A stretch of DNA of 64,000 nt from Mantamonas sphyraenae STR306 (Eukaryota > Protista > CRuMs): the NCBI GenBank assembly GCA_026936335.1, contig JAPMXV010000040.1, positions 136,138 to 200,137 of the forward strand. Reading direction: 5' to 3'. This document shows, piece by piece, positions 50,674 through 55,759 of this stretch; positions within the stretch are counted from its first letter, which is position 1; the number at the start of each line of letters is the position of its first letter. A model generated the notes under the pieces. It searched no databases. It was not told the DNA's origin and worked only from the letters and a program-made list of their open reading frames with translations. Position numbers and translations under genes: made by a program.

Positions 50674-52127
50674 ATGGATGAGTTGTACAATTTTGAACGG
50701 TGTTTGTGCTGCGAGACCGTGGCCAAGAGGAGAGGGAGAGAGCGCGGGATGAGCTCGTCGTTTGGAGTCCGTAGGTTGGGGCTGAGTTGTCGGGAGGGAG
50801 GGACGGGGAAGGGCGGTGGGCAGGACGCTGACGTGAGGGAGGGTAGGGTCGGGGATTCAAGCCATGATTCGGGAGCAGGTGGACACGGAGGTGATTCGTG
50901 CACACTTGGTGGCACGAAAGTGCATTGCTCTGCAGTGTTACTTCTTGGCACGGATGGTGAACGAGTTTCCGTTGGATGAAAATGGGTTGGAGGAATGCGG
51001 TGAGGTGCTGGAGCTGTTTGGAGCGCACGGGGCGCGGAAAGAGAACGAAATTGTACGTTGGGGGATTGTGGAAGGGGTTGGGGAGGGAGGAAGTTGGTGG
51101 GAGGGCGTGTGGGAAGAGGACTGACAGGGTGAATGGACAGCAAATCTTGATGCGGTCGACGTCGACCATGTCTGTGAGCTCGATGAGCAGCGTGGCGTCG
51201 TGGAAGCTGCAACGGTTCCAGTCGCAGCTGCAGGCTGGAGGGACAGGGCAGGGCCAGGGAGGGTTAACACGGCAAGGATCGCCCGGAAGCACGTCAAAGC
51301 GTGTGCGGCGTGATTCGATGAGCAGTTTCGGCAGCAGTGTGCGGCGTGGCTCGCTGGGGCGGACGAGCAGCTTCGCGGTGGGCGGCAAACAAGGTACACA
51401 AGTGGTGTATCACCGGAGCAAGGACGATTGGCAGGGACTGTGTGCGCCACATGCTGTGGGGATCATCGGGTGTGGGAGTGTGGGCAAGGTGATTGTGGGT
51501 GCGCTTCTGGACTCGGGCCAGTTTGCACCGGAAGACATTGTTGTGTCGTGTCGGTCGACGCGGACTCTGAAACGTGTACAAAACAAGGGAGTGAAGTGTG
51601 TGACACAGAATGCGGAAGTGAGTGCAAGCGCAAACATGCTGATTCTGGCGGTGCCGCCATCGCAGCTGCAGCAAGTGGCCGAGAGCGTGCGCGGGACGAT
51701 CCCAGCGGCGACGACAGTGGTGTCTGTGATGGCCGGGGTTAGCGCACACAAGGTGTGCAACCTGTTGGATGTGCCTGCGTGCATATGTACAGAGGTGGAT
51801 GCGGATTTGATTGAGGAGCGGAAGGAGGAGCTGTACCATGTGTTTGAGGACGATTACCTGTTTCAGGACGTGGACATGATCGAACTAGCAGGGTGCATGG
51901 TAAAGAATGTGGAGGAGAAGCTGGAAGCGGTGAGGACGCAGCTAAGCAAGCTGGAGCTGAAACGGAGCGAGGAAGACGTGGGCCATCTGGCAGTATGGTA
52001 TCTGGTACGGAGGGTGATGGTGCGGGAGGAAGAAGAGGATGAAGAGGGGCAGGGAGAAGGAAGAGAGTGGAGCGAGAAGCTGGAAGAGGCGTTTACAGCG
52101 CGATGGCAGGCGTTGTTTGGTGTGTGA
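50674..52127 (+). CDS. NADP-dependent oxidoreductase domain protein (NOXRED1/P5CR-like); exons 50674-50770, 50847-51052, 51141-52127
   Basis: Rossmann motif VGIIGCGSVG, LILAVPPSQL, VVSVMAGVS; lacks the P5CR dimerisation domain. Two GT-AG introns with CTGAC branch sites keep the frame. Confidence 0.7.
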
Positions 52128-54365
52128 TCAGGCATAGGGGAACCAGGAGGAGGGGCAAGGGACAGTGGTGGCCTTTTCGGGCTGGGCCAGGACGTCGAGC
52201 ATGGTGACGGCGTGGTCTTTGTAGGCAGAGGTACGGTAGTAGGCGGCCTGTGCACGCTCACTGATAAAGACAATGTAGATGTAAAACACGTGGGAGTGCT
52301 CTGCGTCTGGCTTGAGAAAGGTGTGAAGGACCTGGCGAGTGCCACGGATGGCAGTGAAGTGCTCTGCGACGGCGGTCTTGAACTCGTCGACAAAGCCGTC
52401 GGCGACGAGGCAGGTGCGTGTGAGCAGTTGGACAGTACCGTACTCGTCGATATCTGCAGAGGAACCGTCGAGGTCGAGGGAAAAGGTGCCAAAGAGGGCG
52501 CGGTCGAGGGTGTCGAGGGTGCGCTTGAGCTGTCCGACGTAGCGATCGACGGCGTCGGTGCGGACGGCAAGGGTGGAACTCTTTGCGCTGCGGCGAGAGT
52601 TTTGCTCCATCCTGGACATGACGGCCTCGTTGGACTCTTGGGGAGGCCTGTTTTCGGCGCTCGTGGTCTCGAGGTGGTCGAGGGCGATTTCGAGGGGCTG
52701 GTAGATGTTCTTGAGCTGTTTGATGGCCTCGCGGAAGTAGTAGCGTGTGCGGAACTGAGAAAACATGTCCTCGTCGTCGTAGGACTTTGCGGTGGAGTGG
52801 AGGACGCCCAGGAGAGACTTGTGCATGAGCTCAAGGGAGAGGTAAACGTCGACGTAGGGCGGGAGGCCTTGGAGGAAGAAGGTTTGGAGTTCCTCGCTGT
52901 CGATGGTGCGCCCTCCGTCTTTGTCGATGGTGTCGAACAGGTTGTCGAGGTCGTACTTGGTCATGACGTTGTCGCGGAAGTAGTCTGAAAACTCGTCACG
53001 CTCGAGGGTACCGTCGTCGTTTTTGTCTGCCTTGCGAAAGACATCCTGGAAGAGAGCAAAGCCCTCAAGCTTGGCGTCGTTCTCGACGGCAGACTCGCCC
53101 TCGTTCTTTGCGGTGTCGATGGCCTTTTTGGCGACGGAGACGAGGTCGAGCTCGCTTTCCTGGCGCTTGGCAAAGAGGTTCTTGAACTTGAGGGTGGCGA
53201 TGACGCCGTAGGAGGCCTTGCGGAACTTGCGCTTGGCGTTGAAGGTCTTGAGGTTGGAGAGGGTGCCCGGGAGGTTGATGTCCGGGGCGTCTGCGTGGGC
53301 GACAATCCAGGGGTGCTCCATGGCCTGTTCGGCGGTGAGGCGCTTCTCGGTGTCGACGACAAGGAGGGAGCTGACGAAATCCTTGGCGGACTTGCTGACG
53401 TCGTCCCAGTAGGGCTCGAGGAACTCGTAGTCGGCGGCGAGGATGGACTGGAAAAGCAGGGCTTGGTTTGTTTCGTAGAAGGGTGGGAAACCGCAGAGGA
53501 GGATGTATGCGATGACGCCGAGGCTCCACATGTCAACAGTGCCCGCGTAGCCTTTCTGTGGGGCGGGGAGGAGGGAGGAGGCAGGAGAGGGAAGGGGTGA
53601 GCAGCTGGGAGAAGGCTTGGTGGCAGGAAGGGCGGGAATGGACGTACGCTTGACGCCTTGTGGGCTTTGAGGATCTCTGGAGCAAGGTACTGTGGGGTGC
53701 CGAGGATGGTCTTTGTGAAGGAGCCCCTGGGGAAGTGGAGGGAGGCCGGGGGAGGGGTGGGCAGGAGGTGTGAGATTTGTGAGGGAGGGAAAAAGGGGAA
53801 CGGGTTTCATGGGGTGGGAGGGCGGTGACGGGGTCGACGATGAGGGGAAAGGACGGGAAGAGGGGCAAGGGACGCACTCATCGAGCATGGTGGCAAAGCC
53901 AAAGTCGGCAATCTTGATCTCGGCGTCCTCCTGGTCGTTTGCGTAGAGGAGGTTTTCGGGCTTGAGATCGCGATGGATGATTCCCTGGCCGTGGAGCCAG
54001 GCAAGAGCACGTGCGATCTTGTAGACGACGGTGGCGGCGTCCTTTTCACTGTAGAAGCCCTTGTCGACGATGCGGTCAAAGAGCTCGCCGCCAGCCATGC
54101 ACTCCATGACGATGTAGTAGTAGTCGGCACTCTCGGAAAACTCGATGAGCTGGACGACGTTTGGGTGGTTGATGTCCTTGAGGAGGTTGACCTCGTTGAA
54201 GAGGTTGTCGCGGTCGTGTTGCATCTTGAGCATGTCCTTTTTGATGCACTTGATGGCAACCTCGTCGCCCGAGTCGCGGTCGACGCCGAGCTTGACGCTG
54301 GAGAAGGCGCCAGTGCCCAGTTCCTGGAGGATCTTGTACTTCTTTTTGAGTTCTTTGTGGCTCAT
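52128..54365 (-). CDS. CaMK-type Ser/Thr kinase fused to NECAB-like EF-hand and ABM module (2 introns)
   Basis: LGTGAFS, VAIK, HRDLKPEN, DFG; spliced exon ~53726-53648 supplies TKTILGTPQYLAPE; regulatory FNAKRKFRKA; EF-hands DKNDDGTLERDEF and DKDGGRTIDSEEL; ABM-like C-terminus ending PSSW. Confidence 0.88.
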   Translation of the reverse strand: MSHKELKKKYKILQELGTGAFSSVKLGVDRDSGDEVAIKCIKKDMLKMQHDRDNLFNEVNLLKDINHPNVVQLIEFSESADYYYIVMECMAGGELFDRIVDKGFYSEKDAATVVYKIARALAWLHGQGIIHRDLKPENLLYANDQEDAEIKIADFGFATMLDECVPCPSSRPFPSSSTPSPPSHPMKPVPLFPSLTNLTPPAHPSPGLPPLPQGLLHKDHPRHPTVPCSRDPQSPQGVKRTSIPALPATKPSPSCSPLPSPASSLLPAPQKGYAGTVDMWSLGVIAYILLCGFPPFYETNQALLFQSILAADYEFLEPYWDDVSKSAKDFVSSLLVVDTEKRLTAEQAMEHPWIVAHADAPDINLPGTLSNLKTFNAKRKFRKASYGVIATLKFKNLFAKRQESELDLVSVAKKAIDTAKNEGESAVENDAKLEGFALFQDVFRKADKNDDGTLERDEFSDYFRDNVMTKYDLDNLFDTIDKDGGRTIDSEELQTFFLQGLPPYVDVYLSLELMHKSLLGVLHSTAKSYDDEDMFSQFRTRYYFREAIKQLKNIYQPLEIALDHLETTSAENRPPQESNEAVMSRMEQNSRRSAKSSTLAVRTDAVDRYVGQLKRTLDTLDRALFGTFSLDLDGSSADIDEYGTVQLLTRTCLVADGFVDEFKTAVAEHFTAIRGTRQVLHTFLKPDAEHSHVFYIYIVFISERAQAAYYRTSAYKDHAVTMLDVLAQPEKATTVPCPSSWFPYA

Positions 54366-54438
54366 GGGACGAGATGGGGAGTGGGATTGGGTTGGGGCGC
54401 TGGGTGGGCCAAGAGAGGAAGTGGAAGGGTCGGAAGCG

Positions 54439-55759
54439 ATGGGAGTGAGGACAGGACTAGGTCTGGGCCTTGGCATGCTGGTGCTGTTGTGTGTGGTGGT
54501 GGGCAGTGGGATGTGCGAGGTGCCGTTTGAGTGGTCGTCGCAGCCGTGGGGGCCAGAGGAGCACGGGACGCCGGAGTTGTTGTCGAATGGGCACGTGCGA
54601 GAGAGGGGAGAGAAGGATAAAGTGAAGCCTGGAACGGGTGTGTGGGATGAAAAGACGTTTGGGAACTATGTGACGATGGATAGCCGGGCGGAGGTGAGTG
54701 AGAAGAAGGGGGGGGCGGAAGGAAGGGCGAACGGGAGCTGACATGGAACGTGGGGCACAGCAGGGTGGAAAAGAGGCATTGTACAGGAGCAGGGTGGTGT
54801 CGAAGAAGGTTGGGTGGCGTTTGGCGCGTGGTAAACTGTTTGTGGTGGAGAATCCACGCGGGCATGTGAGCATGGTGGCGCCAAAGGGAGGGTGTGGGGA
54901 TGGGCGGGTGATGCAGACGGTGCGCAAGACGGCGAAAGAGGCCGGGTGCAGAGTGGCGGTGAACGCAGGATTCTTTCGACCAAAGACGGGGGAGTGCTTG
55001 GGGAATTTGGTGACGGGAGGCAAGAAGGTGCAGACGTCGGATGCGGTGAACGTGAACTTTGGGCTGAGCAAACGCGGAGAGTGGGTGGTTGGATATCTGA
55101 AGGAGCTGCAGGTGCAGCAAATGGCGCTGGAGACGGCTGTGTCGGGAGTGGTGTGGCTTGTGCGGAACGGAAAGAACTACGCGCACACGTCTGGGGCGCT
55201 GGAGAACGAGCACACACAAGAGACAGGGTACCCGCGGTTTGTGACGATTGTGGCACCGCGGACGGCAGTGGGGGTCGATGCAGAGGGGCGAATGATGATC
55301 CTTGCGGTGGACGGGTACGAAACATACCACGAAGGGATTGACCTTGTGGCGATGGCCGATTGGATGATCGAGCTCGGGGCAGTGCAGGCAGTGAATCTGG
55401 ACGGGGGTGGATCAACGACTGTGGTGGAGGACGGGAAGGTGGGGAATTTCCCGAGTGATCCGTGTGAGAGGAGTTTGGGGGCGGTTCCAGGGGAGTTGTG
55501 CGAGCGGAATGTGACGAGTGTGGTGTGTGTGCATGATATGGTGGGGGAGGAGGAGGATGGAGAGAAGGAGGATGGGGAGAAGGAGGGCGGGCCGAGGGTG
55601 GGTGTGGCGGCGCCTGTGCGGCAGCTGAATCCAGAGACGCAGCTGGTGACGTCGCTGGTGTCTGGGCTGGTGGGCGCAGTGGTCGGGGCAGCAGTGATGG
55701 GTGCAGTGTGGAGGAGACAGCGAGGGAGGGTGAGGTATTTCCGGTTACAGCGACTGTAA
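54439..55759 (+). CDS. NAGPA: N-acetylglucosamine-1-phosphodiester alpha-N-acetylglucosaminidase (uncovering enzyme); intron 54694-54760
   Basis: Signal peptide; CRVAVNAGFF..GECLGNLV, SGVVWLVRNG, APRTAVG, AVNLDGGGST, CERNVTSVVCVH; C-terminal TM and YFRL tail. Confidence 0.88.

What the first reader, a model, noticed from the sequence alone, without database searches (positions are those of the whole stretch)
52128..54365. CaMK-NECAB fusion kinase: a full NECAB calcium-sensor module attached to a CaMKI-like kinase
Seen: after the kinase and its regulatory helix (LKTFNAKRKFRKA) comes FQDVFRKADKNDDGTLERDEFSDYFRDNVMTKYDLDNLFDTIDKD..IDSEELQTFF...SQFRTRYYFREAIKQL. A ferredoxin-like C-terminus follows, ending DVLAQPEKATTVPCPSSW. 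Known: animal NECAB1-3 have this order (EF-hand pair with RRADKNDDG, NECAB homology region with QFVTRF, ABM domain ending PASWW), carry no kinase, and are mostly studied in neurons with unclear function. Inference: this protist gene is a Rosetta-stone link suggesting NECABs arose as Ca2+ regulators of CaMKs. It would be a calcium-dependent kinase built independently of plant/alveolate CDPKs.
Basis: partly seen in the sequence, partly recalled or inferred. Interest (0 to 1): 0.82.

Follow-up and report, generated by a model that had tools for sequence, protein, structure and literature searches.

The report
CaMKI-type kinase fused to NECAB module
A single gene of the deep-branching flagellate Mantamonas joins a CaMKI-like protein kinase to a complete copy of the NECAB calcium-sensor protein known from animal neurons; the fusion is real and rare, but it looks like a lineage-specific add-on, not the origin of NECABs.

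Summary
A minus-strand gene (52128-54476, three exons, two short GT-AG introns) encodes an intact CaMKI-like kinase, a CaMK-type regulatory helix, a roughly 36-residue linker and a full NECAB module (EF-hand pair, NECAB homology helices, coiled coil, ABM domain).

- **NECAB homology:** the last 316 residues align end to end with named NECABs (amphioxus NECAB1-like 29% identity, E 2e-38; rodent NECAB3, E 3e-30). The modelled C-terminus matches solved ABM domains (TM 0.82-0.88).
- **One reading frame:** kinase C-lobe, helix and NECAB lie in one exon. The same junction occurs in a Mantamonas plastica transcript and in one environmental contig.
- **Origin:** the genome matches Mantamonas sphyraenae by its statistics.

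- Standalone NECAB-like proteins occur across eukaryotes: animals, a choanoflagellate, Capsaspora, an amoebozoan, Anaeramoeba, a green alga and Mantamonas.
- The three fusions form one clade, sister to Mantamonas' own standalone NECAB.
- The regulatory helix is the same 1-8-14 type seen in many free environmental CaMKs.

So the fusion is most simply derived. It is clearly independent of CDPKs. Whether the NECAB EF-hands switch the kinase is untested; one complex prediction gave no verdict. This is a new domain architecture of moderate interest. The scan also noted the standalone NECAB elsewhere on this chromosome.

The parts
54366..54476 (-). Optional N-terminal extension (37 Pro/Ser-rich codons from the first in-frame ATG); probably 5' UTR. 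The likely start is the Met at 54365-54363.
   Evidence: Homology to CaMKI starts at residues 38-41 of the ORF. The composition resembles the in-frame intron read-through.
53878..54365 (-). Exon 1 from the likely start Met: kinase N-lobe through the catalytic loop (HRDLKPEN) and DFG. It ends two bases into a codon, before the donor GTGCGT.
   Evidence: Pkinase profile 1-150 matched. Best PDB matches are CaMK1D/CaMKI at 3e-43 to 3e-41, ahead of CDPK1 at 1e-39. Sequence read.
53727..53877 (-). Intron 1, 151 nt, GT..AG, C-rich, no stop in the ORF frame.
   Evidence: Translating it gives Pro/Ser-rich text with no kinase similarity.
53648..53726 (-). Exon 2, 79 nt: activation segment and P+1 loop (TILGTPQYLAPE), with Thr at the canonical activation-loop position.
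   Evidence: 67% identical to the same segment of the uninterrupted environmental ORF P0002. Aligns with the activation loops of AMPK, SGK and AKT, Thr on Thr.
53556..53647 (-). Intron 2, 92 nt, GTACGT..CAG.
53301..53555 (-). Exon 3, part 1: kinase C-lobe (subdomains IX-XI).
   Evidence: Rat CaMKI 1a06 residues 193-309, E 4e-36.
53172..53300 (-). Exon 3, part 2: post-kinase segment and basic amphipathic regulatory helix (FNAKRKF...V...F, 1-8-14 spacing), of the CaMK autoinhibitory/calmodulin-binding type.
   Evidence: The alignment runs into the CaMKI regulatory segment. 81% identical between the two Mantamonas species. The same helix occurs in 46 free environmental CaMKs that end soon after it.
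53064..53171 (-). Poorly conserved linker of about 36 residues between the regulatory helix and the NECAB module.
   Evidence: 44% and 24% identity to the two other fusions. Low pLDDT.
52860..53063 (-). NECAB EF-hand pair. The EF1 loop (52992-53027) is canonical. The EF2 loop (52890-52925) has Gly and Arg at loop positions 5 and 6, so it may be weak or inactive.
   Evidence: Pfam EF-hand_1/6/7. Family signature positions are retained. 88% identical to M. plastica. pLDDT above 90.
52656..52859 (-). NECAB homology region: two long helices carrying the Q-F/Y-x-x-R-F/Y...E motif.
   Evidence: Alignment with NECABs. Conserved columns are retained. pLDDT 90-97.
52440..52655 (-). Variable, partly disordered segment with one conserved helix (the coiled-coil region of NECABs).
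52131..52439 (-). ABM (dimeric alpha+beta barrel, ferredoxin-like) domain ending in the family P-x-x-W motif. Four highly conserved family positions are replaced (Y to H, E to I, W to F, H to Y).
   Evidence: Beta-alpha-beta-beta-alpha-beta topology at pLDDT 95-98. Foldseek finds LsrG and ABM monooxygenases, probability 1.00, TM 0.82-0.88. Homologues hit PF03992, but the window protein itself does not. Substitutions.
52128..52130 (-). Stop codon, directly abutting the stop codon of the convergent plus-strand gene, which ends at 52127.

Best explanation
One real gene of Mantamonas (CRuMs) encodes, in order: a catalytically intact CaMKI-type Ser/Thr kinase; its ordinary basic 1-8-14 autoinhibitory/calmodulin-type helix; a variable linker; and a complete paralogue of the organism's own NECAB protein (EF-hand pair, NECAB homology helices, coiled coil, ABM domain). 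Shown: the architecture, the homologies, the conserved junction in three sequences, and the single origin of the fusion next to the Mantamonas standalone NECAB. Inferred: a NECAB duplicate was appended to the C-terminus of a conventional calmodulin-regulated CaMKI-like kinase in the mantamonad lineage. Proposed mechanism: at rest the helix blocks the kinase, and a Ca2+ rise releases it. My committed reading (about 50%) is that free calmodulin still captures the unchanged helix. In that reading the tethered NECAB module adds a second Ca2+-sensitive function. That function would be dimerisation through the ABM barrel and coiled coil, or targeting to NECAB partners. This would resemble the layout of CaMKII: kinase, regulatory helix, variable linker, oligomerisation domain. 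The alternative, that the NECAB EF/NHR unit itself grabs the helix in cis like a CDPK, I put at about 35%. The confidence given (0.6) is for the whole statement. For the identity and the derived origin of the fusion alone it is about 0.9; for the committed mechanism alone it is about 0.5.
For: Continuous frame and splice model. Pkinase 6e-67. CaMKI is the best PDB match for both halves, and the alignment runs into the CaMKI regulatory segment. Full-length NECAB homology: 338 profile hits, with named NECABs at 1e-36 and 1e-30; BLASTP 2e-38 and 3e-30. ESM Atlas nearest clusters are NECAB3 and NECAB1, 0.95 and 0.94. ABM fold. The junction is conserved in the M. plastica transcript P0001 and in the environmental ORF P0002/L008. 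Fusion clade support 99/94, sister to the M. plastica standalone NECAB at 95/86. A standalone NECAB lies about 80 kb away on the same contig and strand. The helix is identical in type to those of 46 free CaMKs. The helix and EF pair are the most conserved segments, the ABM is least conserved, and four ABM signature residues are lost.
Against: No transcript of this genome was available. The only RNA support is one 270-nt metatranscriptome contig inside the ABM region. Nothing here measures Ca2+ or calmodulin dependence. AF2 left the regulatory helix undocked at low confidence, and the complex test gave no verdict, so cis versus trans regulation is open. The gene tree is unrooted, so an old fusion followed by many losses is not strictly excluded. 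P0001 and P0002 are 5'-truncated, so the complete architecture is seen only in the window.
Confidence: 0.6

Rival explanations
1. CDPK-like cis switch. The tethered NECAB EF-hand/NHR unit replaces calmodulin and, on binding Ca2+, captures the adjacent regulatory helix to activate the kinase. This would be an independently evolved calcium-dependent protein kinase.
For: CDPK and CCaMK are precedents (established knowledge). The regulatory helix (81%) and the EF pair (88%) are the two most conserved segments between the Mantamonas orthologues, more so than the kinase C-lobe at 62%. EF1 is canonical.
Against: The helix is unchanged from that of free CaMKs that presumably use calmodulin. There is only one EF pair, and EF2 is non-canonical in Mantamonas. 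AF2 did not dock the helix. The complex test scored 0.00, which the tool says is no evidence either way.
Confidence: 0.35
2. Ancestral fusion. NECABs began as the regulatory tail of a CaMK, and the free NECABs of animals and other eukaryotes descend from a fission.
For: The unrooted tree would allow a root on the fusion branch.
Against: It needs loss of the fused form in animals, choanoflagellates, filastereans, Amoebozoa, metamonads and green algae, all of which have free NECAB-like proteins. Mantamonas keeps both forms. Only three fusions were found in searches of 1.8 and 5.8 billion proteins. The kinase part looks like an ordinary free CaMK with its normal C-terminal helix.
Confidence: 0.06
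3. Annotation or assembly artefact: two adjacent genes (a CaMK and a NECAB) that only appear joined.
For: No full-length transcript of this genome could be laid on the locus.
Against: Kinase C-lobe, helix, linker and NECAB lie in one uninterrupted 475-codon exon. The same junction occurs in an independent transcriptome of another species and in an environmental contig. The junction region is under visible constraint.
Confidence: 0.03

Closest known systems
[quoted passage not shown]
   Same: Same order and full-length homology: the EF pair with the ADKNDDG loop, the NHR motif, a coiled-coil helix, and a C-terminal ABM domain ending P-x-S-W. The second EF-hand is degenerate, as reported for NECAB1 and NECAB3 (PMC11624857).
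   Different: It sits at the C-terminus of a protein kinase. Four of the most conserved ABM positions are replaced. It branches with protist NECAB-like proteins, not with the opisthokont clade.
CaMKI (CAMK1 family, e.g. rat CaMKI 1a06, human CaMK1D 2jc6)
   Same: Best-matching kinase for both halves. It has an activation-loop Thr and a basic autoinhibitory/calmodulin-type helix directly after the catalytic domain.
   Different: CaMKI ends shortly after the helix. Here about 350 further residues form a NECAB module.
CDPKs of plants and alveolates, and plant CCaMK
   Same: A CAMK-group kinase, a junction helix and a covalently tethered EF-hand sensor in one chain, so possibly the same regulatory logic.
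   Different: CDPKs carry a four-EF calmodulin-like domain right after the junction, and CCaMK a visinin-like domain. Here the sensor is a two-EF NECAB module with NHR and ABM, behind a 36-residue linker. The kinase scores higher against CaMKI than against CDPK (150.8 vs 139 bits and 127 vs about 80 bits).
CaMKII
   Same: Kinase, calmodulin-type helix, variable linker, then a C-terminal alpha+beta domain of a type that self-associates (analogy only).
   Different: The CaMKII hub is an NTF2-like dodecamer domain. Here the domain is an ABM fold, typically a dimer in bacteria (PMC11624857), and self-association was not tested.

Membership tests
NECAB family | N-terminal EF-hand pair with the family loop (R/K-A-D-K-N-D-D-G) | tested here: met
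   Pfam EF-hand hits. All conserved EF columns are retained. Alignments.
NECAB family | NECAB homology region (helices with the Q-F-x-T-R-F ... E motif) after the EF pair | tested here: met
   Collinear alignment with amphioxus, rodent, sponge and Capsaspora proteins. R271 and E276 are kept; F/Y variants.
NECAB family | C-terminal ABM domain | tested here: met
   Fold match to ABM structures, TM 0.82-0.88, probability 1.00. Relatives hit PF03992. Caveat: the window protein itself misses PF03992 at E<=1 and has lost four signature residues.
NECAB family | End-to-end sequence homology to named NECABs | tested here: met
   hmmsearch 1.4e-36 (Branchiostoma NECAB1-like) and 1.5e-30 (Peromyscus NECAB3). 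BLASTP 2e-38 and 3e-30.
NECAB family | Standalone protein of about 300-390 aa with no catalytic domain other than ABM | tested here: not met
   Fused behind a kinase. It is therefore a NECAB-module-containing kinase, not a NECAB proper.
CaMKI subfamily (CAMK group) | Intact catalytic motifs (Gly loop, VAIK, HRDLKPEN, DFG, APE) | tested here: met
   Read directly. Pkinase 6e-67.
CaMKI subfamily (CAMK group) | Closest solved relatives are CaMKI isoforms | tested here: met
   CaMK1D, CaMKI and CaMK1G rank first for both halves.
CaMKI subfamily (CAMK group) | Autoinhibitory/calmodulin-binding helix after the kinase domain, and actual calmodulin dependence | tested here: inconclusive
   The helix is present, aligns to CaMKI 286-309 and matches the helices of free CaMKs. 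Calmodulin binding is not testable with these tools.
CDPK (plant/alveolate calcium-dependent protein kinases) | Four-EF-hand calmodulin-like domain directly following the junction helix | tested here: not met
   Only one EF pair, of NECAB type, after a 36-residue linker.
CDPK (plant/alveolate calcium-dependent protein kinases) | Ca2+ activation in cis without calmodulin | not testable with these tools
   Complex prediction returned no verdict. A biochemical assay is needed.

The most novel reading that the evidence does not exclude
The NECAB EF-hand/NHR unit is a calmodulin-like effector that binds CaMK regulatory helices. In Mantamonas it has been tethered to its target, creating a third, independently evolved class of calcium-dependent protein kinase. 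By Rosetta-stone logic, the poorly understood animal NECAB1-3 would act on CaMKI/IV-type kinases in neurons.
Probability: 0.25. Interest if true: 0.8.

Novelty: new variant of a known kind. Interest (0 to 1): 0.55.

Why it matters
NECABs are abundant neuronal calcium-binding proteins whose molecular function, and that of their ABM domain, is still called ill-defined (PMC11624857).

- **A testable lead:** a natural fusion to a CaMKI-type kinase suggests a NECAB-CaMK functional link. It also offers a tractable single-chain system for asking what Ca2+ binding to a NECAB module does.
- **A new architecture:** the fusion adds a further, independent architecture to the short list of kinases with a built-in EF-hand sensor (CDPK, CCaMK).
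- **An older family:** as a by-product, the NECAB architecture turns out to be far older than the cnidarian origin given in the 2024 review. Full-length relatives occur in a choanoflagellate, Capsaspora, an amoebozoan, Anaeramoeba, a green alga and Mantamonas.

Tried and rejected
- **First structure model:** AlphaFold2 with a two-sequence alignment gave pLDDT 45 and was unusable. I replaced it with a 49-sequence alignment.
- **First word search:** searching with the NECAB part found only P0001 and missed P0002 and all NECABs. The exhaustive profile search was needed.
- **PDB by sequence:** the NECAB part hits only generic EF-hand proteins there, because no NECAB structure is deposited. This is not evidence for a generic EF-hand protein.
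- **RNA evidence:** one aquatic metatranscriptome run holds a single 270-nt identical contig at 52296-52565. It shows neither the introns nor a single transcript.
- **Metagenome scan for more fusions:** 46 loci came back, all free CaMKs with no NECAB module in their flanks.
- **Literature:** searches for NECAB with choanoflagellate, unicellular or CaMK terms gave nothing relevant.
- **Long NECAB-like proteins:** P0015, P0018, P0022, P0026, P0039, P0152, P0079, P0096 and others were checked for kinase domains, and none has one.
- Each exon was searched by reference on its own.
Full report
**Where the window comes from**

The window is G000:C40:136138-200137 of an assembly of 25,061,354 bases in 78 contigs. 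The window ends in a TTAGGG telomere. These figures match the FALCON assembly of Mantamonas sphyraenae: 25.06 Mb, 78 contigs, 59.19% GC and TTAGGG ends (PMC10492846). The closest protein to the gene studied here is from Mantamonas plastica (EukProt EP00003). I therefore take the organism to be M. sphyraenae, a CRuMs flagellate. This is an inference from matching statistics, not from a named record.

**Gene structure**

The mechanical ORF on the minus strand, 52128-54476, has 782 codons. It is not the true coding sequence.
- After the DFG motif the translation becomes Pro/Ser-rich text and lacks an activation loop.
- Reading the DNA shows a GTGCGT donor at 53877 and an acceptor AG at 53727-53728.
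- A 79-nt exon follows (53648-53726). In its own frame it encodes the activation segment.
- A GTACGT donor at 53647 and an acceptor at 53556-53557 bound the second intron.
- Both introns and the small exon stay open in the ORF frame because the strand is C-rich.

The small exon is 67% identical to the matching part of an uninterrupted environmental ORF. It aligns with the activation loops of AMPK, SGK and AKT, with Thr on the regulatory Thr. Counted from the first in-frame Met (54476), the exon lengths add up to a spliced product of about 701 residues; from the likelier Met at 54365 it is about 664. Every search used one exon by reference.

**The kinase**

- Pfam gives Pkinase at 6e-67.
- All catalytic motifs are present.
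- Exon 1 matches CaMK1D, CaMKI and CaMK1G best (3e-43 to 3e-41), ahead of apicomplexan CDPK1 (1e-39) and CaMKIV/II.
- The C-lobe plus tail matches rat CaMKI residues 193-309 (4e-36). CDPKs score only about 76-82 bits against 127.
- That alignment continues into the CaMKI autoinhibitory/calmodulin-binding segment.
- The helix is basic, with hydrophobic anchors in 1-8-14 spacing.
- A metagenome scan seeded on this helix returned 46 loci. All are free CaMKs that carry the same helix and stop 10-40 codons later, and none has a NECAB module nearby.

The kinase part therefore looks like an ordinary protist CaMKI-type enzyme with its normal regulatory tail.

**The NECAB module**

The last 316 residues were compared in several ways.
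- **Profile search.** A profile of this region plus its M. plastica orthologue, run against 1.84 billion representatives, gave 338 hits. Dozens cover the query from about residue 5 to 316 in proteins of 300-390 residues.
- **Domain content of the hits.** These proteins carry EF-hand and ABM Pfam domains.
- **Named hits.** They include NECAB1-like proteins of Branchiostoma, Oscarella and Nematostella and NECAB3 of Peromyscus.
- **Pairwise BLASTP.** The result is 29% identity over 323 columns with amphioxus NECAB1-like (2e-38), and 25% with rodent NECAB3 (3e-30). Both alignments run from the first EF-hand to the C-terminal P-x-S-W motif.
- **ESM Atlas.** The nearest clusters by language-model features are NECAB3 and NECAB1 (0.95 and 0.94).
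- **Structure.** An AlphaFold2 model with a 49-sequence alignment reached pLDDT 80.7, with over 90 in the EF pair, the two long NHR helices and a beta-alpha-beta-beta-alpha-beta domain at the end.
- **Fold search.** Foldseek matched that last domain to LsrG and many ABM monooxygenases, with probability 1.00 and target TM 0.82-0.88. The Atlas shape search again returned NECAB clusters.

The refutation criterion "hits generic EF-hand proteins rather than NECAB" is therefore not met. The PDB sequence search returned only generic EF-hand proteins, which reflects the absence of any deposited NECAB structure.

**Is it one gene?**

Kinase C-lobe, helix, linker and NECAB module lie in one uninterrupted 475-codon exon. 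The same junction is present in two other sequences:
- a Trinity transcript of M. plastica (P0001, 58-60% identical);
- an environmental contig with a single open frame running from kinase subdomain VII to the NECAB C-terminus (P0002/L008, 48% GC, open at its 5' end).

Direct RNA evidence for this genome is almost absent: one 270-nt identical metatranscriptome contig inside the ABM region.

**How old and how wide**

Free NECAB-like proteins are found well beyond animals. Hits include Helgoeca (choanoflagellate), Capsaspora, Cochliopodium (Amoebozoa), Anaeramoeba (Metamonada), Chloroparvula and an MMETSP alga (with an extra N-terminal region), and Mantamonas itself. The 2024 NECAB review traces the architecture only to cnidarians (PMC11624857).

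Kinase fusions, in contrast, were found only three times: the window, P0001 and P0002.
- The exhaustive search found no others.
- A profile word search over 5.8 billion clusters gave the two known fusions at over 800 bits, and the next hits at 240 bits or less were plain kinases.
- The metagenome scan found none.

A careful ML tree of 49 modules puts the three fusions in one clade (99/94). That clade is sister to the standalone NECAB of M. plastica (95/86). Animals, the choanoflagellate and Capsaspora form a separate clade. M. sphyraenae also has the standalone gene, at C40:107703-108763.

The simplest history is a duplication of NECAB in the mantamonad lineage, with one copy joined to the 3' end of a CaMKI-type gene. 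Because the tree is unrooted, an ancient fusion with many losses is not formally excluded, but it needs at least five independent losses.

**Constraint pattern**

| Segment | Identity between the two Mantamonas orthologues |
|---|---|
| EF pair | 88% |
| Regulatory helix | 81% |
| NHR | 74% |
| Kinase C-lobe | 62% |
| ABM | 49% |
| Linker | 44% |

Of the columns conserved in at least 70% of 46 free NECAB-like proteins, nearly all EF and NHR positions are kept. Four of the strongest ABM positions are replaced in the Mantamonas fusions (Y to H, E to I, W to F/L, H to Y), while the M. plastica standalone protein keeps the last three, read directly in the alignment; the Y was not read. The fused copy thus keeps the ABM fold and C-terminal motif but probably not whatever pocket those residues form. 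EF1 is canonical. EF2 has Gly and Arg at loop positions 5 and 6, recalling the degenerate second EF-hand of NECAB1 and NECAB3.

**Mechanism**

Shown:
- an intact kinase;
- a CaMK-type autoinhibitory helix;
- a tethered Ca2+-binding module;
- a domain of a fold that usually dimerises in bacteria (PMC11624857).

Inferred: Ca2+ relieves autoinhibition. Two routes are open.
- **Trans route (about 50%).** The helix is indistinguishable in type from those of free CaMKs, and the NECAB EF pair is not calmodulin-like. I therefore favour calmodulin still acting in trans. The NECAB tail would then provide Ca2+-sensitive dimerisation or targeting, a layout reminiscent of CaMKII.
- **Cis route (about 35%).** The strong co-conservation of helix and EF pair keeps a CDPK-like cis switch alive.

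AlphaFold2 left the helix undocked at low confidence, and the one complex job gave no verdict. Neither result counts as evidence.

**Verdict**

So is the claim of independence from CDPKs. The evolutionary inference that NECABs arose as CaMK regulators is not supported. The functional Rosetta-stone idea is legitimate but untested. This is a new domain architecture within a known theme (CAMK-group kinases with built-in EF-hand modules). It is restricted, as far as these searches reach, to mantamonads and one environmental relative.

Noticed in passing
window 32000-64000: The last ~32 kb before the TTAGGG telomere has a strong, sustained G>C skew on the plus strand (0.21-0.37 in 4-kb windows), against about 0-0.17 further in. 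It holds regardless of gene orientation, so the kinase gene on the minus strand has a C-rich coding strand and C-rich introns.
   Followed up: partly
window 50976-52127 (+) and 52128-52130 (-): A convergent neighbour with an NADP oxidoreductase/F420_oxidored Rossmann domain (2e-13) ends at 52127. Its stop codon directly abuts the stop codon of the kinase-NECAB gene, so the 3' UTRs must overlap.
   Followed up: partly
window 54698-55759 (+): The divergent upstream neighbour encodes a NAGPA / phosphodiester glycosidase ('uncovering enzyme') domain (8e-35). It lies only about 220-330 bp from the kinase gene's start, so the two probably share a bidirectional promoter region.
   Followed up: no
G000:C40:107703-108763 (-), about 27 kb before the window (L004, L006): A standalone NECAB gene of the same genome, in at least two exons, 51-69% identical to the M. 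plastica standalone NECAB P0009. It is on the same contig and strand as the fusion, about 80 kb away.
   Followed up: partly
P0015, P0018, P0022, P0026, P0039 (green-algal / MMETSP / environmental): A clade of NECAB-like proteins carries an extra 190-300-residue N-terminal region with no Pfam match. One is from Chloroparvula japonica.
   Followed up: no
P0008, P0047 (JGI metagenome proteins): Eukaryote-type EF-hand+ABM (NECAB-like) proteins are labelled 'quinol monooxygenase YgiN' by the source, a name carried over from the bacterial ABM domain.
   Followed up: no
L009-L054 (metagenome contigs): Many environmental protist CaMKs share an almost invariant regulatory helix start (K-R/T-F/W-N-A-K-R-K) with 1-8-14 hydrophobic spacing, and end shortly after it.
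   Followed up: partly
window 53556-53877: Both introns and the out-of-frame small exon stay open in the ORF frame. Mechanical ORF calling therefore yields a 782-codon protein with a false 108-codon Pro/Ser-rich insert in place of the activation loop, a trap for automated annotation of this C-rich strand.
   Followed up: yes
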